Below, in pieces: positions 1,628-62,329 of a DNA stretch of 64,000 bases. The notes under the pieces are model-generated. The model was not told the origin of the DNA. It saw only the letters and a list, made by a program, of their open reading frames with translations, and ran no database searches. Where the stretch lies: positions 12,462,001 to 12,526,000 of the forward strand of contig NC_043003.1 in assembly GCF_006345805.1 (NCBI RefSeq). Reading direction: 5' to 3'. Source of the DNA: Octopus sinensis. Lineage: Eukaryota. Position numbers and translations under genes: made by a program. The stretch's first letter is position 1, and every line of letters begins with the position of its first letter.

Positions 1628-2806
1628 TAATACATAAGAATATTTTAGAAGCTGGTAATATATTTATAATGTGCTACTGATATTAGTATGATGTTTTTTA
1701 TCCTTCTCAAAAGCATCAGCAACATGCAAAATCTCTATCAAACAATGAACGGTGCATAAAACATGAAATAATAATGATAAGCCATCAGTTAAGTGCATCA
1801 AGATATCAGACATTTCATGTGGCAGATGAGATGGATATAAAGTAACCGGTTGTTATATTAACACTTTACTGGTACTGTTTTGAGTGGAAAGGGTATGCCT
1901 CATCATTTTGATGCAAGGCTAGCACAGCTGTTTGTATTATATGACAGCCATGTAGGTTAGGTCTTGTGTGCATTTGTGTTACTAGTGCTGCCGGACTGGC
2001 TCCTGTGCCGGTGGTGTGTAAAAAGCACCATTCGAGTGTGCTCGATGCCAGTACTACCTGACTGGCGCTCATGCTGGTGACACGTAAAAAGCACCCACTG
2101 CACTCTTGGAGTGGTTGGCGTTAGGAAGGGCATCCAGCTGTAGAAACCTTGCCAGATCAGATTAGAGCCTTGTGCAACCTTCTGGCTTGCCAGTCCTCAG
2201 TCAAACCATCCAACCCGTGCCAGCGTGGAAAGCAGACGTTAAATTATTAATTTATCAACCTTGGAAGGCTGAACACGTTGTTGATTACAGCAAATAATAC
2301 ATGTCTATTGTTTGTTCTATGGTATCCAACCATTGCACACTATACTCTTAATGTAAGCTATGCCAACATGATGAAGGGAATCATCAGAAGGAAAAGTTTG
2401 AGAACTCATTTAATATCTTCATCTTCTACTTAACGTTAAGCATTATCTCTGGCCCTGAAATAATAATCCTTTCAGCTATAGACACAGAGTCTGGAATTTG
2501 GGGGTAGCAGTCTAGTTGGTTACATAGACCCTAGTACTTGACTGGTACTTATTTCATTGACCATAAAAAAAAAAATGAAAGACAAAGTTGATGCTGGTGG
2601 AATTTGAACTCAGAACATAAAGCTAGAAGAAATGCCACAAAGTATTTGGTCCAGTGTGCTAACAATTCTGCTAATCCACCGTCTTAACCCTGAAATAATA
2701 ATAAAACTGATTTAAAAGGGAGAGAGAAAAAAACGGAAGAAATAACTTTACTATCAGTAGAAAGAAGGAAATGGTAAATAAATGATAAAGATAGCATTGT
2801 TACTAG

Positions 2807-2946
2807 TTTACGATTTTATTTTTTGACTGTTTTTTATGTTAATATATTCTATATCCTTTCCTTTTTGTTTTCTTTTCAGGTAAGTTATCCATCATTTTCG
2901 TAATGTATTGAACAATCATTGATTATTATTGCCAGATATCGTGAGT
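2807..2946 (+). promoter_or_regulatory. Candidate recursive splice site (3'ss directly abutting a 5'ss) with a cryptic RS-exon
   Basis: AG-free stretch 2807-2877 ending cctttcctttttgttttcttttCAG (2877-2879), then GTAAGT (2880-2885); second donor ATC|GTGAGT at 2941. Confidence 0.6.
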
Positions 2947-3043
2947 ACTGTCTATGGTTTTCTGTCTTTGATTCTTCATTATCTTTTGCAGTTCAACAGA
3001 AATCTTTATCCTTTCAAAATTTTATTTTCATATCATTTATCAA

Positions 3044-3083
3044 TCTCTCTCTCTCTCTCTCTCTCTCCCTCTCTCTCTCTCTC

Positions 3084-3144
<61 letters not shown>
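3044..3144. repeat. Compound (CT)n(CA)n microsatellite
   Basis: Direct reading. Confidence 0.95.
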
Positions 3145-3148
<4 letters not shown>

Positions 3149-3725
3149 GACCAAAAGGGGTAACATTTGATCTCCTGTCCTATAAGGTGCATCTTACTTC
3201 AACTACTCACGTGTCCCAGAGACTCAAGATAATATAATGAACAGAATAATCCTTTCTACTAAAGGCACAAGGCCTGAAATTTGGAGGAGGTGGGGCAGTC
3301 AATTGCATTGACCCCAATACTCAACTAGTACTTATTGAGTATAAATGAACAGAATAATGACAATGGTCAGTGCAGCTGGAGGACAAAATATACGATATTT
3401 AGTTTAGTCACACGGTTCCATGTTCAAATCCTGCTTTTCTTTATTTTTTTTTATCCTTCTTAGGCTAATGAAATAGCTGGATATTACTGTCTTGAGTCCT
3501 AGACTCCTACAACTGATTTCCTAGTTTCCATGATGTATAAATGACCAAGAGCATAACATTTTCCTTGAATGGGGCATCAGTCCATCACAGGGTTATTCAT
3601 TTACAGCTAAGTGGACAAGAATAACATAAAATGAAGTGTCTTACTCAAGAACGCAACACACTCCCCAGTCAGGGAACTGAAACTATGATCTTACAATCAT
3701 GAGTGTAACACCCTATCCACTAGGC

Positions 3726-3915: not shown

Positions 3916-4490
3916 TCTTGTTTCAGTCATTGGACTGTGGCTATGCTGGGATACCATTTGAAGGGTTAGTCACCCCAGTACTTAACTTTAAGTCTGATAC
4001 CTATTTGGTCTGTCTCTTTTGCTGAACTGCTGTGTTACAGGAATGTAAACAAACCAATGTAGGTTGTCAAGTAGTGGTGGGGAGCAACACATAAACATTA
4101 ATAATGGGCTTTCTCACAGTTTCTTATTTCTTTATTGCCCACAAGGGGATAAACATAGAGGAGACAAACAAGGACAGACAAAGGGATTAAGTCGATTACA
4201 TCGACTCCAGTGCATAACTGGTACTTAATTTATCGACCCCAAAAGGATGAAAGACAAAGTCGACCTCGGCGGAATTTGAACTCAGGACGTAACGGCAGAC
4301 GAAATACCACTAAGTATTTTGCCCAGTGTGCTAACGTTTCTGCCAGCTTGCCGCCTTACACACAGTTTCTGCCTATCAAATTCACTCACAGGATCTTTGG
4401 TAGAAGACAGTTGCCCAAAGTGCTGCATAGTGGGCTTGAACCCGCGATCCACATGGTAGCAAAGTGAGCTCCTTAAACACACACACACAT
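3916..4490 (-). mobile_element. Decayed SINE family A copy, hosting a nested family C SINE
   Basis: Tail ttgtttcagtcattggactgtggc and head segment cccaaagtgctgcatagtggg match other family A copies in the window. Confidence 0.7.
4124..4360 (-). mobile_element. tRNA-head SINE family C (aaggcggcaagctggcagaaacgttagcac...)
   Basis: Full head-to-tail copy flanked by TSD CACAGTTTC (4115-4123, 4361-4369); homologous to 56843-57058. Confidence 0.8.
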
Positions 4491-7739: not shown

Positions 7740-10690
7740 CATCAGTATACATAATGAAATGAAAATGGTGTCTGACATGAATTTCACAGGGGCATTAGGG
7801 ATAGGGTAGGTACCAAGCTGGCAGAATCATTAGCATGTCTGTCAAAATGCTTAGCAGCATTTCTCCCTGCTCTTTATGTTCTGAGTTCAAATCCCATCAA
7901 AGTGAACATTGCTTTGAATCCCTTTGAAGTTGATAAAATAAAGTAGCAGTCAAGTACAGGGGATGATGTAACTGACATGTCCCCTCCCTACCCTTTAAGA
8001 CTGCTGGCCTTAAACCCTGCAGTGGACCAGCATTTTATTTTCAGGAATGTTATAATCTGTTACTTATATGTCAGGAAAATGGGGTAACCAGCCTTATAAA
8101 TTCAAGGGCCCCGAAAGAAAAGAAGTAAAAAGGGATAGGTGTATATGCAATGAAGCAGTTACAAGAGAGACTGAAAACTGTTTTTTGACTTGGCTTACTG
8201 AAAGCTTGCTTACCTTCTATTCTGTCATACTTAACCTTTTGTTATTATTAGTCATATGAAATAAAAACTAATATTTATTTAGTCTCTTTTACCATGTCAT
8301 TTTTTTTTATAGGTGAAATATAGGTGAAAATGTTAAATTGTATGTGAAAATTGTATTTCTTTTGTTTAAATACATTTTCTAAAACTTCCTTATGACTAAT
8401 TCCGAAATAGTAACTGTCATATGTGTGTAACAGTTCTTATTATTAAATATAGCGCACCCCAATCATCGCATCTATTTTATTTGTTTTCCTTTTTGCTCTA
8501 TTTATGTACCCATAATAATGAGTTAGTACTAAGTAGATGGTAGTTTCAACATAAGCAGGTCTATGGAAACCTAGATATATCAGTAAACTGAACTGACCTG
8601 AAATATTTAAGCTGAACAGAGTTAGGGGACAGATAGGTAGACAGTTATTTTTCAGATCTGTCCAACATAACAGCATGAGGAAATAGTCAAAATATGTGAA
8701 TGATGTTGATCATAAAGCAAGAGGTATTTTTCTTATAAGACTACTTGACTGCTAGTAATTACAATAGAAGCTAATCTAACATTTATTTATTTTTACCATC
8801 CCAACATTGATGTTATAAGTGTTGGTATTGAATAAAAGAAGGCTGGAGACTTACATTTACCAAGAAGCTAAAACAATGGACATGTGTTGTTTTAAACCCT
8901 CTGACTTCAAATTCAAACATGTAAGGTGATTTTTGTCCTATCATTATTATAAATACTTTCTTGACTTTTTATTGATCTTTAAGTTCACCCTGTATAGAAT
9001 GTATCTTGACTAAATAATGTTAAAGTGTTATTTATCTGCTCCTACATTTTTATTCATTGTTAGCTAAGTTACCTATAGCCAGAAGCTGTCCTTCATAATA
9101 AAGCAATATTCTCAAAAAAACTGATTTTTGCTAGAATTAAAATTTGTGCAACAGTAACTATAGGCCCTTTAACTATTTCACCTTTCATGTGCGATTTTGA
9201 TTTGCTTAGCAATTAGCTCACACACTTCATAAATTACTTGCATTACGGAAGTAGTTTCTATAATGTATTTTGAAATTTGATAGCATAAAAATACTTTTTA
9301 GAATGCTAACTCATTTTTTGGATTTTGTTATTATGCGTGGTTAAATAATGGCTTTCATAGTTGTGTTTTTTTAGGAACTGCAACTAAATCTTTATAAATA
9401 TGACATGCATATAACACTGTGTATGCATGTCTTATTTGTAAAAATATGTATCTTGTCATTAAAAATTAGACAAACTTTTAGTATGGCTCCTCTGCAAGGC
9501 TTATGAAAACATCAGTTATTCTTCATTTGCATAAATAAAACTCATGATGCAAAAATATATTGAGTCAAAACTTCACTCAATCTTCCGGAGTCTTAATTCC
9601 ACTGATTTTTAGTGATTTGTAAGTCTAAAATTTTACTCAGTTATGTTGAGTCAAAACTGCACCTATCCACAGGGGTTTGTTATTCTGTTTTTAGTTTTCT
9701 CTCTCTTTCTCTCCCCAATATATCATTTCTTCTGTCTTCTGGCATTGTTTTGTCACCTTTGGAGCATGATCCAGTACCTCGACTCATTGGATCCTTGTCA
9801 AACTGCCCAACCGATGCAAACATGGATGTTAAATAAAGATGATGATGGTAATGGTGATGATGATGATGAATTACAACTTTTCTAACTTGCTTTAATGAAA
9901 ACTAATACAATTTTTACTGTTCATGGACTCTGGTTTGACTTTTAAAAACCATTTAAAAGGGAAGTTAATTTGGTTCATGCTATAAAAGAACTTTTACTTC
10001 TTGGAGAATGGACTCAATGTAAGGAAACTGACTATCACTTCATGCTCCATAGAATTTGTTTGGAGAGAAACGATTTGATCAATAACAAAATTGCTACTCT
10101 AAGGCATCTTAGCCCCAGACCAACAGCCAATGTAGATGTAAAAGTTTCAAAAATGTTAATTATTCTCACTGCTCGTTATCTAATTTCTTCATAGGTTAAA
10201 TAGAATTCTTCAACCAATATCCAGCTTTTTTTGCTCTCTATAGTACTCTTTCCATTGTTATACGTTTTACTTCACATTTTTACTTGTCTTAAGAAGTAAA
10301 GGTGTTAGGGTTAGGAGAGAGGGGGGGCTTCTGAGTTTACACTGTTGGCCAGTGGAACTACTTTGATGCTAAATTTCTGCCGTTTGTGGGGGAAGACACC
10401 TGCAGGGGCTGAATCAATAAGCCATGAAGTTATGTGGATACATACAGAGAAATTCAAATTTATTAGTATAGGTGTAAATATTGTCTCTTTTTTTCTTTTT
10501 TTAACAAATGAAGATAATCTCAAACACAGGTGAAAATGGCTTAGTGTATCGGATAAAATACCATTTTAGAAAAAAATGGCCAGCTAAGAGTCTGTTCTCC
10601 CATTTTCCTTTTTTTCTGGGAGTTAACTACTTGTCTGTAAACCAAAAAGCCATGATACATGTATAATATATGGTATTTATTAGTATAGAT

Positions 10691-15500: not shown

Positions 15501-16247
15501 TCTCTATCACAAGTACAGAGGCACATTATTAGTAAAGTGATGAGCTGGCTCTGTATGCTCTGAGTTCAAATTTCCCTGAGGTCAACTTTACCTTTCATCC
15601 TTTCAAGGTCGAGGAAATAAATACCAATTGAGCACTTTGTTGATGTAATCAACTAATTCCCTCTAAAATTCTGGCCTTTTTTGGTAAAATTTGAAACTTA
15701 TTATTTGCAGTAGTAGTAAGCAACAAAACGGTAGAATCATTAGAGTGTTGGACAAAATACTTAGCAATGTTTCTTCAGACTCTTCAGGTTCCGAGTTCAA
15801 ATTCCACCATGATTATCTTTGCCTTTCATCCTTTTTAAATCAATAAAATAAGTACCAGTTGAACACTAGGGTCAATGTAATCGACTTACCCCCTCCCCAG
15901 AAATTGCTGGCCTTGTGCCAAAATTTGAAATTATTATCATCATTATATATACATATAATATATATATATATATCATCATTTAATGCCCATTTCCCACGAT
16001 ACCATGGGCCAGATGGTTTGACAGTAGCTGGCAATATTGTTAGTGCACTGGATGAAATGCTCAGCAGGATTTCACCTGTTGCTACATTCTGAGTTCAAAT
16101 TCTGCCAAGGTCGACTTTGTCTTTCATCCTTTTTGGGGTTGATAAATTAAGTACCAGTTGAATGCTGGGGTCGATGTAATTGACACATCTCCCCTCCCAA
16201 AATGGCTGCTCTTGTGGAAAAATTTGAAACGATTATTATTATTATTA

Positions 16248-24324: not shown

Positions 24325-25689
24325 GTTCATAATAGCAAACACCTTTTACTGTCTCACCTTATACTTTTAAAACAAACTTCTAATTTTCTTATAGTTTGAC
24401 AATACTATGTGCAAAACCAAATATATGGTATCCAAGTCATAACACCAATTTGAACTTCTTACTTGTCTCTTGAGGTCTCTGGGTGAGACTTGGAGTCAAC
24501 TTGGTACAATTACAAAGCAAAATAATAATGATAATTTCTACTATAGTTACAAGGACTTATATTTTGGGATGACAGGCTGGTCAATTACATTGACCCCGGT
24601 GCTTTACTGGTATTGACCCTGAAAGGATTGAAAGGCAAAGTCGATTTTGGAGGAATTTGAAGTCAGGAGAAATGCTGCTAAGCATTTTGCTGAGCTTGTT
24701 AATGATCCTGCAACAACAGCATCATCATCATCACCATCCTTTCTAGGCACAAGGCCTGAAATTTTTTGGGGAGGGATTACATTGATGACATCAGCTCTAA
24801 CGTTTAACTGGTGCTTATTTAATCAAGCTGAAAAAAGAAGAAAAAAAAATGAAAGTCAAAAGTTGACCGTGGCAGAATTTGAACACAGAATGTAGAGTTG
24901 GAAGAAATGCCATTAAGCATCATGTCTAGCATGGTAATGATTCTGCCAGTTCAATAATAATAATAATTCCAGTAAATTTGCTAAGTTCCTTAATGAGCTT
25001 TTTTTTCTTTTTCCCTTCTGTCTCTTTGCTTTCTGAGTTCTGGTCTCACCCTGGTTTTCAAAGAAGGTAGACTTAGTCTGTCACCCAGTTTAACACCTCA
25101 CCCTAGCACATTGGCTGTTGTTAGTGGAATCCACTGTATTCTGCAAAACAAACAAGGTTGGGTCTCCAATTTATGGATAACTTCCTCCCACCTGTCTTGG
25201 AAACTCTGGAAAGAGTTTTGGGCACTGCTTTACCCTCTGATTTGAAGATAATAAAAAAAAAATATTGGGAACTATAAAGTATAAATAACACTTTTCCATT
25301 CTTTATAAGAGGACCACTAAGCTGATGGAGTGATAAAAAATATCTCTAAAAAAATACTCTATGTATGTGTGCTAACACTTGCCTGCTCCCTTTTCTTTCC
25401 CTGTTTCTGTCATTCTCAGTCTCATTCACTCTAGAGAAACAATTATACCATGTCTATTTTTATAGTTATCCTACTTACAGAGACATGATATTACATACAA
25501 AAAGCCATCATAGTTTATCTTTTGAAATAACTAATTCTAGAAATAACTAATTCTAGAAATGTTTCTTGAGGTCATACAGAGTTCACATTGAGCAAAGAAA
25601 AGATTAAAACTCATTTTCATCTTGCTTTGTGATATTTTTTAGATTGTCTGTCACTCTTCTCATATGTTTCATACACACACACACACATG

Positions 25690-26316
<627 letters not shown>

Positions 26317-28803: not shown

Positions 28804-28937
28804 GGCCACCGAAATATATATATATATATATGTTTGTTTTTGTGTGAAACTATCTTAAAAACAATAGAACATTAAACTGAAGAATTACTCAATATTTTTG
28901 GAAAAGTACATATCTATTATCCTTTTACAATAAGAGG

Positions 28938-29026
28938 GATGACAGTGACTTCGAAGTTTCAACCTGCTACTCTTCGTCAGAGTCTAACAAAAGTTAGCAG
29001 GCCAAAACTTCAAAGTCATTGTCATC
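28938..29026. repeat. Palindrome (44-bp arms, centre 28982); each arm is a hammerhead-like motif
   Basis: gatgacagtgacttcgaagtttcaacctgcta...tagcaggccaaaacttcaaagtcattgtcatc. The minus arm reads CUGACGA...GAAACUUCGAAGUC. Confidence 0.75.
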
Positions 29027-29059
29027 ACTCCTCTTTTTGCCTCTGTGAGGCCCAACGTT

Positions 29060-29190
29060 TGAAGGCCATGTTGGATGAGGTGGTGAAGCATGATCTTCAA
29101 ACATTGGGCCTCACAGAGCTAATGATGAAAGACCGAGACCTCTGGAGATATGCTGTGACTGAGAAAACCTGGCAAGTAAAGTGAGATCAC
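29060..29190 (+). mobile_element. RTE-clade LINE ORF2 C-terminal fragment
   Basis: DEVVKHDLQTLGLTELMMKDRDLWRYAVTEKT, typical of an RTE C-terminus. Confidence 0.7.
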
Positions 29191-32100: not shown

Positions 32101-35100
32101 AATGGGCAGAAATAAATAACAAAAATTATTGTTGAATGCAGCACAATTTTAGGGTTGGATGCATATTAGTTTTATCTCAGAAACTCCTACTTTCTTGGCC
32201 ATTTGTCAAATGCTCTTGAAGGATTTTGTAAAAATCAAAATAAGAGAATATAAAAGAATTGAGTAGGTATGAAAAACTGTGAGGCAAAAATGAAAAATTT
32301 AAGCTGAATTTGCAAAAAAATATTTATACAAATGACAAACGTGGAGGTGTATAACTTAGTTCCTGAATAAGCTTATCGATCTTTATAAAAATCAGTTAGC
32401 TTATTGAGAGTGGATTTGTCATTAACTTTAAATATCTGCAAGAAATATCATACATGGCAACAAGTGTATGTATATAAAGATATTACGTATATTTCTTTAG
32501 ATGTTTTCACAACCGTGCATTGAAGCATGTATACCTTGCTTCTCAGAATGTAGCACTATTTAATTTGGGTGTATAAATCTCCAGGTAGGATATCTAGACT
32601 TATCAAAACATCTTTGATATCATATTGAGTAAGATTAATAGTAATGTAAATATGAGTGTATGGCTGGGTTTTCGAGCTACAAAGGAAATTGCAGTACCAT
32701 TTTCACCAGCATAGATAAACTATCACCCCTTTGGAATATTTTTGATATATTGCCAAATAAATACTCAAAGGAATAAATAATGGGCTTCTTCAGATTTACT
32801 TTCTTAAAAAAAAAATCCTTTAGTAGGTGAAAGATGGATGTACCAAGTAAAGAGGTTACTAATTGTAATATCCATGTATGTGTGGGTTGCTATACAAATT
32901 ATTAATAGTAATTGTTCTTGAGAGAGAGGAAGTTTTATCTTTTAATGGATATCACATGTATTATATGCTAACCCATCTGTTGATTTATAACACACTGCTA
33001 TATATATATATATATATTTATTTATTATTTATCCATCAAGTTTTCCTGTTTTAACCACTTCAACTTGAAACAGTTTATCTACTTACAACTTTGACTCTCA
33101 CTGATCCTTCTTATTCAGGAACTCCACTCCAGCTTGTTTTGGCTACCCCCACCCCCACTTTTTTTATTTATTTTTGAAGTACAATGTGGTGAATTTATTA
33201 TATTTCATGAAAATGTATTTTATATTACTGCCTAACTTCACATCCTGGGGTGGGAGGGAAACAGACATCATACGTACTGTTTTATGAGGAGTGTCAGTAA
33301 ATGAATAAGTTAGGGTGTCAGCAACTAGATGAAGGAGCTGCAATGTTGATATCTGTCCCATTATTGGCATTATGCCTGGTATAGGGCATTGAACCTCTCT
33401 CATCCTTCATTTACCTGTCAGCAATGCAGATGAGAAAAATATAATACACAGGTGTAACCAAAGAAACTGATGGAACACCAAAGAGGCTTCTTTTTTGACT
33501 TAATTTTAAGGTTGTAGAACAATATTATGATATCTGCCACTTGTAATAGATATATAGGTTGTGATTTAGACAAGTTACTAAATTATCAATTATGTCTTTC
33601 ACTTGTATGTATGGTGTATGTATATATATATCTTTTACTTTGTCGGTCATTGAGTTGTGCTCATGCTGGGGCACTGCTTTGGAAGGTTTTGTCAAACAAA
33701 ACAACTCCACTACTTATTTTTCAAGGGTGGTACTTATTCTTTTGGTCTCTTTCGCCAAACCACTAGGTTGTGAGGACATAAAGAAACCAACACCAGTTGC
33801 CAGGCAGTAGTGGACGGGGACACACACACACAGAGTGAGATTCTACATAGTTTTCCATCCATCAAATTCACTTACAAAGCATTGGTCAGCCCAAGGATAT
33901 AGTAGAAAGCATTTACCCAAGGTGCCATGCAATGGGACTGAACTCAAAATCATGTGATTGCAAAGCAAACTTCTTAGCCACTAACTCATGCTTGCACCTA
34001 TGAGTCTTTTTTTTTTTTAAATGACCAACTGTGATCTGAGGAAGATCTTGCTGCTATTTCTAACACATTGAATGACTGCAGAGGCTTCTTCAGTGGTTTC
34101 ATTTTATGGCTGTAGAACGATATTATGTTGCTTTGCTTTTTCTTTTTGCCAAGGATCCCTATATCTTGTGGTTTGAAAGTTTCTCTGGTGTGTTATTGGA
34201 AATTTACATCCTAGAAAAAGAAAAGATGTCAAATCATCATTTAACCTCCACTTTTCCATACTTGCATAGACAGAATTTATTGGGGCAGATTTTTCTATGG
34301 CTGGATGCTCTTTTGTTGCCAATCCTCACTTGTTTCCACGTAAGGTAATATTCCCCATGACCAGACGTGTTTTCATGAAAGATTCGAAAAGGACACTGCT
34401 TAAATGATGGTGACATTTGTTTACCACTATCACATGAAGTCAAGGCAAAGATACAGTAACACAAATACACACAATAGGCTTCTTTCAGTTTTTGTCTACT
34501 GAATCCTCTCACAAGACTTTGGTTGACCTGAGGCTTATAGTAGAAGACACTTGCCCAAGGTGCCACACAGTGGGACTGAACCCAAGAGTATGTGGTTGGG
34601 AAGTAAACTTCTTACCGCACAGCCACACCTGCACCTAAAATCATTGTGCAAAATAATTCAATGATGAGGGTAGAAAGTTAACTATAGACACATGTTTATA
34701 TCAAAAGAATATTGTTGCAATGACATTATTTTTAACATGTAGTCACAGATGCCATGATGCTTTCTTATATTTTGTTATAACTTATTTGCAGAAGTTTTGA
34801 CACCATTTACCATATTCCACAACCCCATACATAATTAGATCTTTTGTTTTGACTATCTATCCTTGCTTCCACTATCACGAAGTAGACCTACCTAATTCCA
34901 GTAGGTAGGCTGAAATAAACAGAGCAGTATACCTTACTCTAAACAGCATCTTGCACACATGACTCATTGGCTTCTGTGAGTTAGCACTCAGATAACACAG
35001 GCTTCTCATTGCTTTCATTAGCTTCAATCTGTCTACACACGTACTTATGTACATGCACACATCTACATTCATGTAGTTTGTTAATCTCTCACTGTTACGA

Positions 35101-35394
35101 TTCTATTCTTCATTTGTGCCAGGTTTGACTCAGAATGTTGTTAAAAATTTGTGTTTATTTAAAGTTCACTCAAAAAACCATTGAGAAAGTGCCAAATGCT
35201 TTCTCAATATTTTTTTTTATTTCATTTTATTTTATTTTTAAAGGTAAAAGTCATCTAAATAAAGTTCTTTGCTTTTTTCCCGAAATAACTCGTCTACTAG
35301 AATAATTATATATTTCATTGGGTGGCTTCTGCAGTATTGATGCGGATGTGTTAAGAACTGTGGTGATGCCAATTCTACTTAGTAAATTAATTTT

Positions 35395-35397
<3 letters not shown>

Positions 35398-35428
<31 letters not shown>

Positions 35429-35860
35429 TTAGCGTCCGCTTTCCATGCTAGCATGGGTTGGACGGTTCAACTGGGGTCTGGGAACCCAGAAGGCTGCACC
35501 AGGCCCAGTCTGATCTGGCAGTATTACTATGGCTGGATGCCCTTCCTAACGCCAACCACTCCGTGAGTGTAGTGGGTGCTTTTTACGTGCCACCTGCACA
35601 GGTGCCAGACGGAGCTGGCAAACGGCCACGGACGGATGGTGGTTTTTACGTGCCACCGGCACGGGGGCCAGGCAAGGCTGGCAACGGCCACGATCGAATG
35701 GTGCTTTTACATGCCACCGGCACGGAGGCCGGTCGGGGCGGCACTGGCAATAGACACGGTCTGGTGGTGCTTTTTACGTGCCACCGGCACAGGGACCAGG
35801 TGAGGCTGGCAACGGCCACGATCAGATGGTGCTTTTTACATGCCACCGGCACGGAGGCCA
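35398..35860 (-). mobile_element. RTE-tail-type SINE carrying a GC-rich ~60-bp internal tandem array (5 units)
   Basis: (CAT)n tail; repeated core tgcttttacgtgccaccggcac. Confidence 0.75.
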
Positions 35861-36221
35861 ATATATATATATATATATTATCTTTTACTTGTTTCAGTCG
35901 TTAGACTGTGGCCATGCTGGGGCACCACCTTGAAGAAATTTTAGTCAAATGAATTTATCCCAGTACATTTTCTGTTAAAGCCTGATACTTATTCTATCAG
36001 TGTCTGTTGTTGAACAGCTAAGTTACATAACACACCAACACTGATTGTCAAGTGATAGTGGGAGCAAACACACACATTCTTTTATATATATATATATATG
36101 TATATATACAGTTTAAAAATAGGATAAAATTTTTATAAGAATTTATCAAGTAGTTAGCGTGAAAAACCTCATAAGAGAAAAAAATCCACCAATTCTTTCA
36201 CTTAAATATATTTATTTATAC

Positions 36222-38331: not shown

Positions 38332-40429
38332 TGTGTACAAGTTGTATTTTTCAAACTGTTTTATCAAAGCATTATTTCTGGTGATAGTCGAATTTGCCTA
38401 TCATTCTTTTGGTATTGACGAAATAAAGCACCAATCAATTACTGGGATCAATGGGATTCACCAACACCCTCCCCTCAAAATTTTCTGGTCTTATGCCTAA
38501 ATCAAGAAACATTATTTTGGGGGTAATATTGAGAAACCTGATAGTAGCAAGCTGGCTGAATCGTTAGCATGCCGGGCAAAATGCTTAACGGCATTTCATC
38601 CATCTTTACATTCTGAGTTCAAATTCTGTCAAGTTTGACTTTACCTTTCTTTCTTTCGGGGTTCGATAAAATACTGGTTTCAATGTAATCAACTTACCTT
38701 GCTCCTCTGAAATTGCTGGCCTTGTGTGAAAATTTGAAGCCAATATTTAGAAACCTTTGGTGCAAATTGTGATGAACTCGAAAAAACTCTGTGTACATGA
38801 AATAAAATTTCTCAAATTGGAAATTAGTATCAGATTGTTGTTTTGATTTTTTTGAGAGATTAGTGTCACATCACTCTACTAAATAATAGTAATAATTCAG
38901 TTTGTTGTAATATTATTTGTGAACATCTAGTTCTGTTCGTTATTTACATCTCAGTGTCCATCTTCCTGGAATTATCTAGGATTTTCATCTTTTAAATAAG
39001 TTTATCATTTTTATTTTACCAAAAAAAAAATAAATTCAGGAAAGACTTGTTAAAATAAGATGTTCTTCTTTTAGAAATTGTTTAGAAATTGTCCGTTAAA
39101 TTTGTTTCCAATGAAAAGTTGTTTACTGTTAGTCAACTTCTAATCAACTAAAATCTTCAGGAGAAAGAAATCCATGAATTTATTCCTTGATTCTTATCTC
39201 AATGTCAGATTTCTACTGTGTTGCTTTCTCTCTAATTTGTATAGGACTAACTCTAGTCATGAATTTAAATATTTGGGATATTTTTATTCTCTATAATTAA
39301 CAACATCAATATATTTCCAAATCGTTGTAAAAATGGTATATAAGGTACATACTGTTACATATTGCTGAATCTATTGAATATTACTTGTTCAATACAAATT
39401 TACCTTACCATTTAGCTAGTTATCTTGTTATTAATGTAAACAACTCTTCAGTAACAATTGTGCTCACACACAGTTTGAAATCTTTTCCAAGTTCTACTTT
39501 GAAGTTTGTGTTTATAGCAATAATTTTAAATCTCTTGTCAGGTGATTAAAAAGATGATTATGATATTCATGTTAATTAACGACTAATAGCTTGTTTAAAA
39601 TTCTTTATATATATACATATATATATATATTTATTTATTTTATTTAATGCTATTCAATTATAAATCTGACTTATTTACCGATTCCTTCCAATACACCTCT
39701 TTTGGTGAGATGATATTGCATGATGACAAAAGTGAAAATAAATTTGTAATGGTTTAAATTTTTTCTTTTTTTAGTGACTCTATAAGTTGATCGATTAAAT
39801 GAATATATTCACAATAATTCAAATTGTAACGACAATGATATAAAATGGAGCAAACAAAAACAATTTTGTTATGTCAAATTAAAAATAGTCATGCAAGATG
39901 TTTTGAGAATAAAAATATTTAGATTAAATTAGATTTTGTTGAAGCGTCTGGAGTAGGAGATGAATACTTCATCTGAGATAAACTATAATCAATTTATTTA
40001 TTCAAGATAAGTCTTTTTAGATGTCACTAATTTTAAGTTCTAAATCAGAGATGTCTGTCTTTTTAGAGATGAATGAATGACATAGATGTAAAAAGACATA
40101 TGAAAAAATAAAAGGATTACTACTTAACAAAATTTATAGTAACTTTTAGATTATACTATTTAAGCTAAATTATATATAGAGATGTGTGTGTGTGTGTATA
40201 CATACATATTTACTTCTGATATAAGGATAAAATTTTTCAAAAAAATCTTATCAATGGCCAGCATATTAAAATACCTTTTAAGGTGAAAATTATAAACAAT
40301 TATAAGGGCAAAAAAAAAAAATTTTCTATGCCAATATGCTGAAAGATAGACTTTAGACCATCTAACCACATACAATATTTTTCTTTTGCGCTTATTTATA
40401 ATTTTGTGTGTGTGTGTGTGTGTGTGTGT

Positions 40430-40740
40430 CTGATGATGGCCATCCACTTGTGACCGAGGAAGACCACTGCTGACCTTTAGAAACATTGTACGTTCTAAGA
40501 CTAACTTATATTTTGCATTTGCTGCTCCATTGCTAATGAGCCTTGGTCTTGACAAGCATACATGGCTACAAACATTGCAAACCAAGCTTTCCCCATTCAC
40601 TATGCTAGCAGTGCGCTTTCGAGCAGCATGCTTAAACTCTTCATGCAAGATTCGTGCACTTTCAAACCTGTCGACCCCCTCCTTAAAGGTATCCAAGGGC
40701 CATGTGATAGTGTTATGATGGATTAGGCATGTCACCCTAC
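40430..40740 (-). mobile_element. RTE-clade LINE 3' fragment (ORF2 C-terminal Cys/His region)
   Basis: KEGVDRFESARILHEEFKHAARK...LVCNVCSHVCLSRPRLIS, an RTE C-terminal CxxC...LS..GL.SH-type motif, followed by (CA)n. Confidence 0.7.
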
Positions 40741-42040
40741 AAGTAAAGTTTATTTAACAAACATCTGCACAATTTTGTGTACCCAGCTTCATTTGCAGCC
40801 CTTGGGTTGACTCAATGTTATAACAGAAGACCTGTATGATAGAACCAGGTGATTGGAAAACAAACTTCTTAACTGCACATCTATCCCTATGCTAACCTTA
40901 TTAATATCTAGGAAGCCAGGTTTTTTTTATATGTTGTTTTCTTATTACCAATGATATGAACATGATATCTGTCAGAGTAGTTTACCTCCAATCTCATCTA
41001 TGTTAAGGAATTTCATCTCATTCACACACCTTTCAAGAAAAGTGAAATCTATTGTCTTGTATCAGTTCACTGTTGCCACTTCTCTCAAGATGTGTTTTTG
41101 TTCAGATATGATATAAATTTATATTTGGCTTTGATTGTATTTGATTTGAAATGTCAAAGTTTGATCATTGTTGGAAATATTGAAATAAATTAACAGTTGC
41201 GTGCTATTGGGAAATCCACATTGGACAATGTGGTTTATAATCCTTAAAACACACATACACACAACTGGAACAGGTTTGATTATAAGTCTTCTTGATCATG
41301 AGAAAACACTAGTAATATAGACATACCAAACTCGGAGAAATCAAACAATACTAATAAAAAAAACTAAAACATCTCTATTACATCCTCAGCACACATTACC
41401 CACACTTACAGATCAAGTATAGAATGAATGAAAACACTTGAAATGAAAGACCATTTGCATCTGAAGCAAACAGAACGTTGCTGCATCAAGCTGTGAAGCA
41501 TATAACTTCTGCCATTGCAAGGGTAGTCACCCTCATAAAAAAAATTATTCATGTCAATAGTACTTCAGGACACTACTGACATAAAAGCATTAGTTCTCTC
41601 TCTTACTCAAACCCATAAAGCATATTGACATTAAAATAACAGTAACATTAATAATTTTATTAGTGTCAATCACTGTGCTGAGATGTAATAGTTGTTGTTC
41701 GTTTGAAGTGCAAAGGTACAGAAACTACTGTTTTCTGATTGAGTCTATGTTGCTAGCCTCTGCTTTGGTCAGTATCAGGTATACAAGAACAGAGTAGGTA
41801 GTGGAGGAAATGCTACATGCTTAGACTTCCACACTACATCACATGTGATAAACCACTTGCTCTGTGTATTGGTGGCCCTCAACTAGCAAAAGCATGATAC
41901 AACTGGAGGTTATAGACCTGTATAGGTTGTTCCTGGTTGTGTAAATGAGTACATACAATCACAGGTTTCCTTGAATAAGAATGACAAGGGTTACAACACT
42001 TACTGGTAAAGCAAATGGTTAGAACTCTAACCAAGAGGCA

Positions 42041-42300: not shown

Positions 42301-43192
42301 TAACCAAGGGGCTTATACCATTAGCCCATTAAGCTTTCAGGTTACTCTCTCAAATATAATGCTTAATGCTTATGTATTCACATTGTTCTGCATTAATCAT
42401 GCTTTATCTCATAGCTTTGAGATTCCAATGATGTGATTGTTTATTTTCAGAATGACATTGTAGGGTAGGTGTGAGAGGCCAGATCTAGCCAGTTTGAATG
42501 AAAAACAAGTAAAACATTTAGGCCATAGGCTTGATAGCAAGAGGAACACTTTATCAACACTTTGTCCAACAGATGAAAGCAATTCCTTAAAGGCTGGTAG
42601 CGAAAAGAAGGCTCAGTAACAAAGAAGACACAACCAAGTTACCCACAACTATAGCATTGTATTTGCACAAGAATTAAATCATTTTATACAACAATAGGGA
42701 AAATTTTAGTTTCTCTCTTTACACATAGTTATATTTTTCTTAGAAGAATGATGCCAGTCACCAATTTCCAATATAATACACTGCCCACATGCCACTTTAC
42801 TACTCTCTGTTTATACCTCTTGGTATAACATGAAAGAGGACATGCTATCTGTATAAATTGCTTTTTTTGGTTGGAACTTGTTTTGTTCATGTGCATGTAT
42901 GCAACTGTAAGTGCAGACGCATGCACACACAGAGACACACATTATTGGATGATCGTGTCTATGGAAGCTATTGAGTTTTGATTTCAATTAATTATTTGAT
43001 TCTGAGAGTCAGCTGCTGTGGTTAGACATTTTTTTTTTAATTGTTTGTTGTTGTTTTTTCGTTTCAGTTCTCATTACTGATTAATGTATTTTTCTTTCTT
43101 TCTTGGTTTCTTTATTTGAACAATAATGAGCTGTTGGACCTTTATTCTCATCTTTTGTGTTATTTCTGCCCACCAGTTTATTAAACTTTCAC

Positions 43193-43195
<3 letters not shown>

Positions 43196-43273
<78 letters not shown>

Positions 43274-43279
43274 CATATA
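43196..43279. repeat. (TA)n microsatellite ending ~40 nt upstream of the exon acceptor
   Basis: Direct reading. Confidence 0.95.
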
Positions 43280-43321
43280 CTTGGATTAATATTCATATAT
43301 TTTCTTTTCTGTCTTTGCTAG

Positions 43322-43453
43322 GAGTTACTGACCAGAGCATCACTGGAAACAGACAAGCAGGACTTGATGGCAGAGGTTACCAGCCTGAAAATCAAGCTAA
43401 CAACTGCTGAAAGAGAGCGGCATGAACTAGAGGAACAATTAAAGTCAGCACAT
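43322..43453 (+). CDS. PPFIBP1: Internal coding exon (phase 0-0, 44 aa) of a liprin-beta ortholog: ELLTRASLETDKQDLMAEVTSLKIKLTTAERERHELEEQLKSAH
   Basis: Acceptor tttcttttctgtctttgctag|GAG and donor CAT|gtaagt; open for 132 nt. The peptide aligns without gaps to the liprin-beta coiled-coil segment I recall from human PPFIBP1 (ELLSRTSLETQKLDLMAEISNLKLKLTAVEKDR...). The symbol denotes the PPFIBP1/2 family; no database search was run. Confidence 0.9.
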
Positions 43454-43474
43454 GTAAGTATATACTTGTTGCTA

Positions 43475-44040
43475 TTGGGTTGTCCGGAAAGTTTGTGCCG
43501 ATTTATAGTAGCTTACCTTTCAACTTATTTTAGAACATGGTTGAGTCCATAAAATAGGATTTGACTACACCTCCATTTAGAGCACAGTTGAAGCTATCTT
43601 TTCAAGGAAGAAGGTATATGTTTCTATAACCTGTGTTAATTCTGTAACCCTTTAAAATAGAAGATAAGAAAGTCCATTTTTGGCACTTCATGCTTTGAGA
43701 ACCTGACAAAAATTGCTACAGCTCGGCTGAGATGTGTTACCCCACCCTCCATATTCACTAGATATTGCTCCTTCGGATTTCCACTTATTCAGGTCTCTGC
43801 AGAATAGTCTTAATGGTAAAAATTTCAATTCGTTGGATGACATAAAAAGATACCTTGATGAATGCTTTGCTATGAAACCACCTCAGTTCTGGGAAGAGGG
43901 TATTTTCAAGTTAAAGTTAAGATGGAGACGCATTGCGCAACAAAATGGTTCATATTTGGTTGATTAAAAATGTAATGGCAAGTATTTATTAACCTTTTTC
44001 TTTCCTTTAAAAATCGGCACGGACTTTCTGGACAACCCAA
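43475..44040 (+). mobile_element. Internally deleted mariner (DD34D) transposon
   Basis: ~30-bp TIRs TTGGGTTGTCC(G/A)GAAAGT..GTGCCGATTT with TA TSDs (43473-74, 44041-42). Remnant start (I)EDKKVHF joined to the C-terminal LPHPPYSLDIAPSDFHLFRSLQ...NGSYLVD* (YSPDLAP motif). Confidence 0.92.
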
Positions 44041-45780
44041 TACATTTATGACAATGACAAGGAAGATTTACTTCAAGAGTGGGAAGACTTTGTTTTATCA
44101 GTTCAACATATTAAATATGCCCATATCTCTGCGATATCAATTTAATTGTAAAAAAAACATTGTTGGAATATACAGCTTATAGGCATATAAGTAGATTGTG
44201 TAGTTTAGTAGTGTGTGTTTTGTCATGTAATTAGATATGGTTGTGCAGATATAGAGTTTATTTTGTGACCACTTCGTCTCAAGTTCTACCTCACTGCTCA
44301 GTACTTTGGGCAAAAAGACTTCTACTGCAGTCTTGGGCCAACCAATGCGTTGTGAGTAGGATTGCTACACAGAAACTGTGTGGAAGTTTGTCATATCTAT
44401 GGATGTGTGAGTATGTATAAATTAACTTTTATTTAGTAAAGTGTGTCATAGCTTTTTAGTCTTGGTTTAACTCTGACCAAGCTGATCTATGGTCAAAAGG
44501 GTTTTAATTATGACCAGCTTGTCTTATTTTCCAGACATAGTCAATCGAGGTGGTTTACATTATCCAATGTGTTGTTTTCTTGCCTGCAGGGTATTATTTA
44601 AAGGATTTCTGTTCACTATTTTGAGCAACCATATGAAGGATCCCCCATTGGCTCTAAATGAAATGTGTGTGTGTGTGTTGCCAGATTAATGCATTCCTTT
44701 ATCTTTTTTTATCATATTGTGCACTATATCACATCCAAAATCTGTGACTAGTTATAGACACAGGAATAGACTTCAACAGAAAATCTGGAAAACACATTGC
44801 TTTTATAACAGATCACTTATATTTAGAACTGTGTTATATTTGATAGTCTGATGTAGTTCTCCAGTATGAATTTAGCCATGATGGTTAAAATGAAATAAAG
44901 AACATTAGCAGTGCCCCAGCATGGCCACAGTTCAATAAGTGAAGAAAGGAAAAGAAATATTTGACACAATTCTTAAAGTTAAATGCATAAGTAATAGTGT
45001 AATTGTAAATATGAAAACAAAATTGAAAATTTGGCATTAGAATCAATAAATTTCAAATATACCAATTTTACTTATTCCACCCTTAATTCTGTGTTAAATT
45101 TTGGTACAAAATTTTTTGTTTGTAATTTTAGCTTTGCTGTATCTATAAGTTATGCCCCATTTTTTTTTTAAATTAAAATCAATCATAAAATAGAATGAAA
45201 TCCTCAAACGAAAAAAAAAGATTTATTATTATTCATTTTTCAAGGTTTGTTTTGTTGCATTGCTAGGTCACTCACAAATATTCACTCACTTTTATAGGTT
45301 TATTCATCCTTACCCTTTTACACACAAGTATGTACTTATTGAAAAGGATAATAATATACAGATGGTTTCATCCTGAATTGATCCAAATTTAGAATAACGC
45401 TAAATACCATTTATCTTTTTTTTTTCTTCTTCTTCATAGTTGTATATATTTTTATCGAAATAAAATAAAATATAGGAATACATTAAAAGAAAGAATGGAA
45501 CATAAAAAATAGTTATTAATACCAAATACTAATAGAAAGGTTATTTGTGTGTGTTCCCGGGAATGGCAAGTTCAAAAAGAAACTATATCTGGCCACTTAA
45601 AATAAAGTGCTCAAAGACAAGTCTAAGTGTGAATAATATATATATACATATATATTCACATATATATATTTACACACACATATATATATATATATATACA
45701 AATACATATATACATAAATGTATACATAATACACACACACACTTAGAAAAAGAGGTGTGGATGTGATTAACTTTCAACTG

Positions 45781-47846: not shown

Positions 47847-47955
47847 AAACGTATTACTGAATTGGAAAAGAAACTATTATTAAGAGATGCTGAACTTCAT
47901 GAACTTAAACAGAGACTCACAAAAAATGGTACCATTTTATCAACAGACAGTGCAG
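47847..47955 (+). CDS. PPFIBP1: Internal coding exon (phase 0-1) of liprin-beta: KRITELEKKLLLRDAELHELKQRLTKNGTILSTDSA(G)
   Basis: Acceptor attttgtttcttacag|AAA and donor GCAG|gtaaga. Heptad-rich coiled-coil peptide in frame with the previous exon. Confidence 0.8.
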
Positions 47956-56283: not shown

Positions 56284-56842
56284 GCAGTGAGTTGGCAGAA
56301 TTCTTAGCATGCTGGGTTAATTGTATAGTAGCTTTTCATTCAACTTTACATTTTGAGTTCAAATTCCACGAAGGTTTGCCTTTCATCTTTTTGGAATTGA
56401 TGAAATAAGTACCAGGTCAATGCAATCGACTAAACCTAAACCCCTCTCCTTAGATCTCAGGCCTTGTACCTATAGTAGAAAAAAATTATAATTAAAAACC
56501 ACAAAAAAACCTTGTGAAATAGAGCTATCCAGGGTTTCCTGGTCAAAATATTAAATTTATTTTGCCATTTATCAAGCTGATAGAAACATTTTACATGTGT
56601 GTATGCTTATCTGCCATAAACCACTATCACTTGTCAACTGGTGTTGGTTTGTTTACATCCTCATAAGTTAGTTCAGCAACAGACTATAGAAGTACCAGAC
56701 ATAAAAAAATAAGCACTGGTGTGGATTTGTTTGACTAAATCTATCAAGGTGGTGCCCCTGCATGGCTGCAGTCCAATGACTGAAACAAGTAAAAAATAAA
56801 CAGTTACACCTCATTCAATCTGTATTTTTTTTGTCTTCATAA

Positions 56843-57058
56843 GGCGGTGAGCTGGCAGAAATGTTAGCATGTTGGGTGAAACGCTTAGCGGTATTTCGTC
56901 TATCTTTACATTCTGAGTTCAAATTCTGCTGAGGTCAACTTTACCTTTCATCCTTTCAGGGTCGATAAATTAAGTACCAGTTGTATACTGGGGTCGATCT
57001 AATCGACTGGCTCCGTCCTCAAAAATTCCGGGTTTTGTGCCTTGAGTAGAAAAGATTC
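56843..57058 (+). mobile_element. SINE family C
   Basis: 14-bp TSD TTTTGTCTTCATAA on both sides. Confidence 0.85.
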
Positions 57059-60667: not shown

Positions 60668-60730
60668 GGGACGTCAGCAATAACCGCCCTCTAGAACGAG
60701 AGCGTACCTTAGATAGACTTAAGAAAAAAC
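60668..60730 (+). CDS. PPFIBP1: 63-nt symmetric (phase 1-1) exon, probably of liprin-beta: (G)DVSNNRPLERERTLDRLKKK
   Basis: Long U/G-rich tract ttgtttgttgtttgttttgtttcag|GG and donor AAAC|gtaaga. Open only as needed for a phase-1 join to the 47955 donor; frame 0 has a TAG. CpG-rich relative to its flanks, which lack recognisable transposons. Confidence 0.65.
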
Positions 60731-61866: not shown

Positions 61867-62329
61867 CCATACTCTGGGATATGCCAATACACATAGATAG
61901 AGAAATTAAGGCCAACAGACCAGATATAGTTGTCAGAGATCATGAAAAAAAAAATGTTTTCTAATTGATGTATCAATACCAGCGGATGACAACGTGTCTC
62001 TAAAAGAAATGGAGAAACTCTCAAAATACAAAGACCTGGAAATAGAGGTAACCAGAATGTGGAATCTAAAAACAGAAACAATTCCTATCATAATAGGTGC
62101 ATTAGGCATGATAAAAGAATATTCAGACAAATACATAACAAAAACACCAGGACTTACAAACACATATAACATACAGAAAATTGCACTACTGGGCACTGCA
62201 CACATCCTACGCAGAACACTTTCCATACAATAACCATCAGAGCATCACAACAAATCACAGCACATACCCAAGGCACACAGAGCTGCGCTCGGTAGTGAAG
62301 TGAAAGCACGATATAAAAAATATACTACT
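61866..62329 (+). mobile_element. 5'-truncated R4/Dong-type (restriction-like endonuclease) non-LTR retrotransposon
   Basis: TILWDMPIHIDREIKANRPDIVVRD [frameshift in an A-run] CFLIDVSIPADDNVSLKEMEKLSKYKDL...LLGTAHILRRTLSIQ*, containing the RPD...D...K..KY RLE motif. Confidence 0.8.

What the first reader, a model, noticed from the sequence alone, without database searches (positions are those of the whole stretch)
2807..2946. Consensus recursive splice site with a poison RS-exon in a very long cephalopod intron
Seen: 71 nt without AG, a branch-like TTAAT near 2839-2843, a strong pyrimidine tract, and CAG immediately followed by a perfect donor GTAAGT. A second perfect donor GTGAGT lies 61 nt downstream. 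The 61-nt cryptic exon is frameshifting and has TAA in frame 0. Established: this AG|GT plus RS-exon layout defines ratchet points in Drosophila and recursive sites in long vertebrate neuronal genes. It is on the same strand as the liprin-beta exons, about 40 kb upstream of the first one seen. Inference: stepwise intron removal in a mollusc; I am not aware of this being described in cephalopods.
Basis: partly seen in the sequence, partly recalled or inferred. Interest (0 to 1): 0.85.

Follow-up and report, generated by a model that had tools for sequence, protein, structure and literature searches.

The report
Candidate recursive splice site, octopus liprin-beta
Deep inside a very long intron of an octopus liprin-beta gene sits a textbook "acceptor fused to donor" signal with a short stop-containing cryptic exon, the layout that flies and vertebrates use to remove long introns in steps. 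Here only the sequence supports it; no RNA or cross-species evidence could be obtained.

Summary
It has a 71-nt AG-free stretch, a 19/20 pyrimidine tract, CAG|GTAAGT at 2879/2880 and GTGAGT at 2941. The 61-nt interval has stops in all three frames.

It is the best AG|GT site of 405 on both strands. The pattern Y10-AGGTRAGT occurs once, against none in 100 shuffles. I estimate about 0.002 such sites per window by chance.

The gene context holds. The window carries three exons of Octopus liprin-beta-1 on the + strand (43322-43453, 47847-47955, 60668-60730). No exon for residues 1-203 lies in the window, so the site sits in the sense strand of a phase-0 intron longer than 43 kb. The gene spans 431 kb in O. 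sinensis.

Every sequence-level defining feature of a ratchet point with a cryptic RS-exon is met. The two decisive features, conservation and RNA intermediates, could not be tested with these tools.

Recursive splicing is the best explanation (about 0.45). The rivals are a chance pseudo-exon and an ordinary alternative or poison exon. If real, it is a new member of a known kind in a new phylum. Interest is moderate.

The parts
2807..2877 (+). AG-exclusion zone (71 nt) upstream of the candidate acceptor. It holds branch-like TTGAC (2823-2827) and TTAAT (2839-2843).
   Evidence: The AG-free length of 71 nt compares with 143, 48 and 33 nt at the three real acceptors in the window.
2855..2877 (+). 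Polypyrimidine tract, 22/23 Y (19/20 in the scored 20-mer), ending in C at -3.
   Evidence: It is stronger than the tracts of the three real acceptors here (17, 14 and 15 of 20).
2877..2885 (+). CAG|GTAAGT: juxtaposed consensus acceptor and donor, with the junction at 2879/2880 (candidate ratchet point).
   Evidence: It is the only CAGGTAAGT on either strand and the top-ranked of 405 AGGT sites.
2880..2940 (+). Putative cryptic RS-exon of 61 nt. It shifts the frame, has stops in all three frames, and has an in-frame TAA at 2901-2903 (...MLQN-VSYPSFS-stop).
   Evidence: The intron is phase 0 because exon 43322 starts with the full codon GAG.
2941..2946 (+). Downstream donor GTGAGT (context ATC|GTGAGTACT), which could define the RS-exon.
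2459..2704 (-). SINE copy (tRNA-like head towards 2704) flanking the unique island 2705-3037 that holds the site.
   Evidence: more than 10 related copies elsewhere in the window. Nothing in 2705-3037 matches elsewhere in the window.
3038..3146 (.). (CT)n(CA)n microsatellite, followed by a second SINE fragment at 3232-3336. This is the right-hand boundary of the unique island.
8876..8920 (+). Alternative first coding exon of liprin-beta-1 isoform X16 (MDMCCFKPSDFKFKH). Its donor is CAT|GTAAGG at 8921 and it joins exon 43322. The upstream end of the exon is unknown; 8876 is the ATG.
   Evidence: 15/15 residues identical to XP_036360423 (P0169).
43322..43453 (+). Liprin-beta-1 coding exon, residues 204-247 (ELLTRASLE...LKSAH). 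Acceptor ...ttgctAG|, donor CAT|GTAAGT. This is the expected target of the second recursive step.
47847..47955 (+). Liprin-beta-1 coding exon, residues 248-284.
60668..60730 (+). Liprin-beta-1 coding exon, residues 284/285-304 (DVSNNRPLERERTLDRLKKK).

Best explanation
The site is an intronic recursive splice site (ratchet point) with a cryptic RS-exon in the intron (>43 kb, phase 0) that precedes the exon for residues 204-247 of an Octopus liprin-beta-1 gene.

Proposed mechanism. Every step below is inferred.
1. As the region is transcribed, U2AF and U2 bind the 23-nt pyrimidine tract, the CAG, and a branch point at TTAAT (2839-2843) or TTGAC (2823-2827).
2. U1 on GTGAGT (2941) defines a 61-nt exon.
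3. The upstream exon, which ends ...CAR AAY for Gln-Asn, is spliced to 2880. This removes the 5' part of the intron as its own lariat.
4. The junction AAY|GTAAGT recreates a donor.
5. That donor outcompetes or matches ATC|GTGAGT and is spliced to the acceptor at 43321. This removes the remaining 40.4 kb together with the 61-nt exon, so the mRNA is the same as after one-step splicing.
6. If the 2941 donor wins instead, the 61-nt exon is included. The frame then reads VSYPSFS-stop and the transcript should be degraded by NMD.

Transcripts that start at the internal X16 exon (8876-8920) bypass the site.

Shown here: the motifs, their rarity, the strand, the intron context and the stop codons.
For: - Motif: exact CAG|GTAAGT with 19/20 Y and a 71-nt AG-free zone. 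It ranks best of 405 AGGT sites on both strands.
- Its pyrimidine tract is better than those of the three real acceptors of the same gene.
- The four real donors in the window are all GTAAG-type, so the consensus applies in this animal.
- Rarity: Y10-AGGTRAGT gives 1 hit and 0/100 shuffles with any hit. About 7 top-grade acceptors x about 3e-4 gives about 0.002 expected per window.
- Context: sense strand of liprin-beta-1, with no exon for residues 1-203 in 1-43321. The gene spans 431 kb in O. sinensis.
- Recursive sites in flies and mice concentrate in introns longer than about 40-50 kb (bioRxiv 10.1101/2024.12.11.627982).
- The site lies in a 333-bp island with no other copy in the window, not inside the flanking SINEs.
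- Argument by inference: a strongly defined frameshifting exon in a coding intron would be harmful unless its own 5' end is a donor.
Against: - There is no RNA evidence of any kind: no junction reads, sawtooth coverage or lariat reads.
- There is no conservation evidence. Orthologous intron DNA could not be reached.
- Genome-wide, the same arithmetic allows about 1-40 equally good sites by chance in sense intronic DNA. The site was also picked out because it looks like this.
- Lenient pseudo-exons are common in the window: 5 on + and 7 on -.
- After the first step the recreated donor is AAY|GTAAGT, with no G at -1. It is only modestly better matched to U1 than ATC|GTGAGTA, so complete skipping of the 61-nt exon is not assured.
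- It is the only strong candidate in at least 43 kb of intron.
- Whether the 2705-3037 island is a low-copy repeat elsewhere in the genome is unknown.
Confidence: 0.45

Rival explanations
1. Chance pseudo-exon. A T-rich stretch of AT-rich intronic DNA happens to end in CAG|GTAAGT with another GTGAGT nearby. It is ignored, or used only as splicing noise, and is not under selection.
For: - AGGTAAGT alone is at chance frequency: expected about 0.8-1.2 per strand, observed 1 on + and 4 on -.
- 0.4% of + strand 20-mers are >=19/20 Y.
- Extrapolated to about 1 Gb of sense intronic DNA, this gives tens of PPT+YAGGTAAGT sites, and about one with a GTRAGT 30-100 nt downstream.
- Lenient pseudo-exons are frequent on both strands.
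- The features were chosen after looking at the sequence.
- No conservation or RNA support was obtained.
Against: - Joint rarity in this window is about 0.002, or about 1e-4 with the second donor.
- The acceptor is stronger than every real acceptor of the gene in the window. Signals this close to consensus would be hard for the spliceosome to ignore.
- Even a chance-born site would probably be spliced, and it would then behave recursively.
Confidence: 0.3
2. Ordinary alternative exon. 2880-2940 is a real 61-nt cassette exon that is included in stable transcripts, and the GTAAGT at its 5' end is incidental. It could be a regulated poison exon that lowers liprin-beta output through NMD, or a non-coding 5'-UTR exon of transcripts such as isoform X16, whose coding start lies 6 kb downstream.
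For: - Strong acceptor and donor spaced 61 nt apart.
- Stops in all frames are compatible with a UTR or poison exon.
- The gene has at least 16 predicted isoforms with several alternative 5' ends. One of them (X16) starts translation at 8876 and could have upstream UTR exons.
Against: - An exon that begins with the perfect hexamer GTAAGT is expected in only about 3e-4 of exons by composition. If the exon is real, the recursive layout is unlikely to be incidental.
- None of the five listed O. sinensis isoforms that were fetched and read shows an insertion at the MLQN|ELLTR junction.
- The sequence upstream of the X16 ATG has no convincing acceptor, which suggests a true first exon (inference).
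- No transcript containing it could be retrieved.
Confidence: 0.15
3. A splicing-factor landing site without splicing. The 9-nt U1-complementary CAGGTAAGT and the nearby GTGAGT would act as intronic U1 sites, for example to protect the long intron from premature cleavage and polyadenylation, or as a decoy exon that modulates intron excision. No catalysis would occur at 2880.
For: - In the unspliced RNA, CAG|GTAAGT offers 9 contiguous matches to the U1 5' end (sequence; U1 pairing from established knowledge).
- There are two consensus donors within 61 nt.
- Decoy exons in long introns are described (PMC7373989, listed).
Against: - This does not explain the exceptional pyrimidine tract, the C at -3 or the 71-nt AG-free zone immediately upstream.
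- GTRAGT is not enriched on the sense strand of this window: 30 observed against about 32 expected.
Confidence: 0.05

Closest known systems
Drosophila intronic ratchet points with cryptic RS-exons (Burnette 2005; Duff 2015; Joseph 2018; summarised in PMC8605326)
   Same: - Tandem consensus acceptor|donor, (Y)n-CAG|GTAAGT.
- Location in a very long intron on the sense strand.
- A downstream donor that defines a short cryptic exon (61 nt here, about 50 nt in flies).
- Exon content out of frame with premature stops.
- The ratchet-point donor matches consensus at least as well as the RS-exon donor.
   Different: - Fly sites are supported by sawtooth coverage, junction and lariat reads, and by ultraconservation of the motif. 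None of these is available here.
- The host is a mollusc.
- An annotated alternative first exon lies between the site and the 3' exon.
Vertebrate recursive splice sites in long neuronal genes (Sibley 2015; EJC-controlled RS-exons, PMC6224609)
   Same: - The RS-exon model: exon definition by a downstream 5' splice site.
- Competition between the reconstituted donor and the RS-exon donor.
- Inclusion of the RS-exon introduces a premature stop.
- The host gene is a very long synaptic-scaffold gene (431 kb in O. sinensis).
- Outcome may depend on which upstream or promoter exon is joined.
   Different: - Liprin-beta is not among the genes for which I found recursive splicing reported: no paper in the library holds both terms.
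- The vertebrate motif is usually less close to consensus than this one.
Expressed RS-exons such as the Ubx m1/m2 microexons (Hatton 1998, as described in PMC8605326)
   Same: A short exon that begins with a functional donor, so that inclusion or skipping is decided after the first splice.
   Different: The Ubx microexons are 51 nt, keep the frame and are translated. The 61-nt interval here cannot be translated in any frame.
NMD-coupled poison cassette exons
   Same: A short, frameshifting, stop-containing exon with strong splice sites inside a coding intron.
   Different: Poison exons do not normally begin with a consensus donor. They are typically highly conserved, and that was not testable here.

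Membership tests
Recursive splice site / ratchet point with cryptic RS-exon | [quoted passage not shown] | tested here: met
   19/20 Y, CAG|GTAAGT at 2879/2880
Recursive splice site / ratchet point with cryptic RS-exon | Lies on the sense strand inside a long intron of a transcribed gene | tested here: met
   - Liprin-beta-1 exons on + at 43322, 47847 and 60668.
- No exon for residues 1-203 in 1-43321, so the intron is >43 kb.
- The gene spans 431 kb in O. sinensis.
- Inference: no unannotated gene boundary lies in between.
Recursive splice site / ratchet point with cryptic RS-exon | Downstream 5' splice site that defines a short cryptic exon (about 50 nt) | tested here: met
   GTGAGT at 2941, giving a 61-nt exon. 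A GTRAGT in a 70-nt span has a chance probability of about 0.035.
Recursive splice site / ratchet point with cryptic RS-exon | Cryptic exon out of frame or carrying premature stops, absent from mRNA | tested here: met
   - 61 nt, stops in all three frames, in-frame TAA at 2901-2903.
- None of the Octopus isoforms read has an insert at MLQN|ELLTR.
Recursive splice site / ratchet point with cryptic RS-exon | Ratchet-point donor stronger than the RS-exon donor | tested here: inconclusive
   - By consensus, GTAAGT is above GTGAGT.
- After the first splice the contexts are AAY|GTAAGTTAT and ATC|GTGAGTACT, which have similar U1 complementarity (counted by hand).
- No MaxEnt model and no octopus-trained model was available.
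Recursive splice site / ratchet point with cryptic RS-exon | Evolutionary conservation of the acceptor|donor core above the flanking intron | not testable with these tools
   - The gene range is too long to fetch.
- Exact and homology look-ups of overlapping ORFs found nothing.
- The only comparator DNA (L001, about 79% identity) covers exon 43322, not the site.
Recursive splice site / ratchet point with cryptic RS-exon | RNA intermediates: upstream-exon-to-site junction reads, sawtooth coverage, lariats from the site | not testable with these tools
   No read-level RNA data can be reached. Transcript look-ups for isoforms X15 and X16 returned nothing.
Ordinary cassette / poison exon | Inclusion in detectable mRNA isoforms | tested here: inconclusive
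   It is absent from the protein isoforms read. UTR content and NMD-sensitive isoforms cannot be seen from proteins.
Transposon-derived sequence | Other copies of the same sequence | tested here: not met
   2705-3037 has no other match in the 64-kb window, whereas the flanking SINEs have many. Genome-wide copy number was not testable.

The most novel reading that the evidence does not exclude
This is a working recursive splice site of the RS-exon type in a cephalopod. It would be the first in any lophotrochozoan. It would imply that stepwise removal of long introns through cryptic out-of-frame exons goes back to the bilaterian ancestor, or arose repeatedly wherever introns became very long. 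It would also imply that octopus long neuronal genes depend on it.
Probability: 0.45. Interest if true: 0.55.

Novelty: new member of a known kind. Interest (0 to 1): 0.4.

Why it matters
Recursive splicing has been demonstrated only in flies and vertebrates (fruit flies, mice and humans, and tested in lungfish). Cephalopods independently evolved large, repeat-rich genomes, very long neuronal genes and heavy RNA processing.

A validated site would give a third, distant lineage. That would help decide whether the RS-exon mechanism is ancestral or convergent. It would also supply a concrete motif for a genome-wide search in molluscs.

For annotation, it warns that a 61-nt exon at 2880-2940 seen in RNA-seq would be a recursive intermediate or a poison product, not a coding exon.

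Taken alone, a single unvalidated motif is a lead, not a discovery.

Tried and rejected
1. Fetching the whole gene from an annotated Octopus genome. Isoform X3 is not on record. Isoform X1 was found, but its 431-kb range is too long for DNA to be returned.

2. Exact look-up of the two window ORFs next to the site, 2929-3237 and 2919-3170. Neither is on record.

3. Homology search with the unique part of ORF 2929-3237. There were 2 word-sharing candidates and none scored.
   - Afterwards I reasoned that this route cannot work. The unique island has no stop-free stretch longer than 43 aa.
   - The collection seems to hold ORFs of about 59 aa or more.
   - Short-read contigs would break at the flanking SINE and microsatellite.
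   - I therefore left the third search unused. A hit in a very close species would also have been weak evidence.

4. Transcript contigs for isoforms X16 and X15, to see their 5' UTRs. Neither is on record.

5. The idea that the site is part of the adjacent SINE was rejected. SINE similarity ends at about 2704, and its tRNA-like head faces the site.

6. Rfam scan of the window: no family reached threshold.

7. Sense-strand depletion of cryptic donors as indirect evidence: not seen. GTRAGT is 30 on +, about as expected, and 50 on -.

8. Other recursive candidates on the + strand were not credible. AGGTGAGT at 37913, AGGTAAGA at 847 and others all lack a comparable pyrimidine tract or donor.

9. 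Pfam on seven long ORFs elsewhere in the window: nothing.

Full report
**1. The observation**

The sequence is exactly as described.
- The last AG before the site is at 2805-2806, so 2807-2877 is a 71-nt AG-free zone.
- It contains TTAAT (2839-2843) and a second branch-like TTGAC (2823-2827).
- The tract 2855-2877 is 22/23 pyrimidines.
- CAG (2877-2879) abuts GTAAGT (2880-2885), and GTGAGT lies at 2941-2946.
- The 61 nt between the two donors carry stops in all three frames. In the frame set by the host intron they read GTA AGT TAT CCA TCA TTT TCG TAA.

**2. Is it more than chance?**

AGGTAAGT by itself is not. Markov models of order 0-3 predict 0.8-1.2 per 64-kb strand. There is 1 on the + strand and 4 on the - strand.

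The combination is rare.
- Of 405 AGGT sites on both strands, this one has the best pyrimidine tract (19/20), C at -3, and the only perfect donor among sites with a good tract.
- Of 7,441 AG dinucleotides, only 7 have >=18/20 Y, Y at -3 and >=20 nt without AG. Multiplying by the GTAAGT frequency of about 2.4-3.4e-4 gives about 0.002 expected per window.
- The tool's own shuffles agree: Y10-AGGTRAGT occurs once, and in 0 of 100 dinucleotide shuffles. With two mismatches it falls to background, 4 against 2.7 expected.
- A GTRAGT within the next 30-100 nt adds a factor of about 0.035.

Two cautions apply. The features were selected after inspection. Scaled to roughly 1 Gb of sense-strand intronic DNA, the numbers still allow between about one (all features) and a few tens (tract plus YAGGTAAGT) of chance sites per genome. 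Lenient pseudo-exons (>=15/20 Y followed by GTRAGT within 250 nt) are common: 5 on + and 7 on -.

**3. Gene context**

The 44-residue exon at 43322-43453 was searched against the representative library. It hit molluscan liprin-beta proteins. A follow-up search found Octopus sinensis and O. bimaculoides liprin-beta-1.

tblastn places three exons on the + strand with 100% identity inside the exon bounds:

| Exon | Residues |
|---|---|
| 43322-43453 | 204-247 |
| 47847-47955 | 248-284 |
| 60668-60730 | up to 304 |

- Nothing for residues 1-203 is found in 1-43321, even at very permissive thresholds.
- The intron that ends at 43321 therefore extends beyond the window. It is longer than 43.3 kb and is phase 0 (...MLQN|ELLTR...).
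- In O. sinensis the gene spans 431 kb.
- The candidate is thus on the sense strand, 40,442 nt upstream of the acceptor it would finally feed.

**4.

Isoform X16 (XP_036360423) starts MDMCCFKPSDFKFKH and then joins ELLTR. That peptide is encoded exactly at 8876-8920 on the + strand, followed by GTAAGG.
- So there is an internal alternative first coding exon 6 kb downstream of the candidate. It probably has its own promoter, because no convincing acceptor precedes it. That last point is an inference.
- Transcripts from that start never contain the site.
- The N-terminal exons of isoforms X15, X14, X12 and X1 are not in the window.

**5. Local surroundings**

The site sits in a 333-bp island (2705-3037) that has no other copy in the window.
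- On the left is a SINE (2459-2704, minus strand, tRNA-like head towards the site) with more than ten relatives in the window.
- On the right are a (CT)n(CA)n microsatellite (3038-3146) and another SINE fragment at 3232-3336.
- The site is therefore not part of the abundant repeat. Whether the island is repeated elsewhere in the genome is unknown.
- No Rfam family matches the window.

**6. Mechanism proposed**

The layout meets, point for point, the published description of a fly intronic ratchet point. [quoted passage not shown] It also fits the vertebrate RS-exon model (PMC6224609, listed).

I therefore propose the following.
1. The 61-nt exon is defined by exon definition.
2. The upstream exon is spliced to 2880.
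3. A donor AAY|GTAAGT is recreated.
4. That donor is spliced to 43322, which discards the 61-nt exon.
5. Use of the 2941 donor instead gives VSYPSFS-stop and NMD.

The real donors in this window are all GTAAG-type (CAT|GTAAGT, CAG|GTAAGA, AAC|GTAAGA, CAT|GTAAGG), so the consensus applies here. The candidate's acceptor is stronger than the three real ones, which score 17, 14 and 15 of 20 Y.

One weak point is the missing G at -1 in the recreated donor. Its advantage over ATC|GTGAGTA is modest, so some inclusion of the exon might occur.

All catalytic steps are inferred. Nothing here shows that the site is used.

**7. Tests that could not be done**

Conservation and RNA intermediates are the two criteria that separate real recursive sites from motif matches. 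Validated fly sites show about twice the conservation of control AGGT motifs (PMC6110457).

I could not reach orthologous intron DNA or reads.
- The annotated gene is too long to fetch.
- Exact and homology look-ups through overlapping ORFs failed, and on reflection could not have succeeded.
- Isoform transcript look-ups failed.
- One short-read contig from another octopod (L001, SRR11869394) aligns to the exon-43322 region at about 79% identity, with a Ser-to-Thr change in the exon (LKSAH becomes LKTAH). This shows that species at a useful distance exist in public data, but the contig does not cover the site.

**8. Comparison with what is known, and novelty**

Recursive splicing is established in Drosophila and in vertebrates.
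- In the searchable library, no paper combines recursive splicing with octopus or with liprin.
- Cephalopod or mollusc co-occur with it only incidentally.
- If the site is real, it is a new member of a known kind in a new phylum. It is not a new mechanism.

**9. Verdict**

| Explanation | Probability |
|---|---|
| Functional recursive site | about 0.45 |
| Unused chance pseudo-exon | about 0.30 |
| Ordinary alternative or poison exon | about 0.15 |
| U1/decoy site without splicing | about 0.05 |

Interest is 0.4. It is a good, cheaply testable lead: public octopus total RNA-seq and a multi-species alignment would settle it.

Noticed in passing
window 8876-8920 (+): First coding exon of liprin-beta-1 isoform X16 (MDMCCFKPSDFKFKH, donor GTAAGG at 8921) lies inside the long intron. 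This implies an internal alternative promoter about 34 kb upstream of exon 43322.
   Followed up: partly
window 2459-2704, 3232-3336, 4190-4343, 15749-15940, 48997-49170, 56840-57060 and others: Many diverged copies (67-77% identity) of one tRNA-like SINE in both orientations. Several have (CT)n/(CA)n microsatellite tails.
   Followed up: partly
window 43196-43275 versus L001 579-632: A long (TA)n microsatellite lies about 45 nt upstream of the acceptor of exon 43322. In the related octopod contig the same position holds a (CA)n run. This is microsatellite turnover right next to a constitutive branch/acceptor region.
   Followed up: no
L001 (Logan SRR11869394), 1021 bp: Contig from another octopod that aligns to window 42587-43474 at about 79% identity and to 44041-44197 at about 75%. 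About 570 bp of the window's intron (43475-44040) is missing between these two blocks, which points to an indel or TE difference. The exon differs by one residue (LKSAH becomes LKTAH).
   Followed up: partly
window 25608-26269 (+): About 650 bp of TA-rich low-complexity repeat. It produces the longest 'ORFs' in the window (YIYIYI...).
   Followed up: no
whole window, both strands: Consensus donors GTRAGT are commoner on the antisense strand (50) than on the sense strand (30). Composition predicts about 35 and about 32. The antisense excess is unexplained and may come from repeat content.
   Followed up: partly
window 61946-62230 (+), 28876-29181 (+), 40163-40753 (-): Open frames of about 95-200 aa that resemble, from memory, the C-terminal tails of retrotransposon ORF2 proteins. 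Pfam found nothing, so this is unverified.
   Followed up: partly
window 34000-36000: Locally GC-richer segment (0.405 against about 0.34 for the window). It has an ORF containing a run of eleven histidines (35306-35563) and a 150-aa Gly/Pro/Ala-rich ORF (35452-35901). The nature of the segment is unknown.
   Followed up: no
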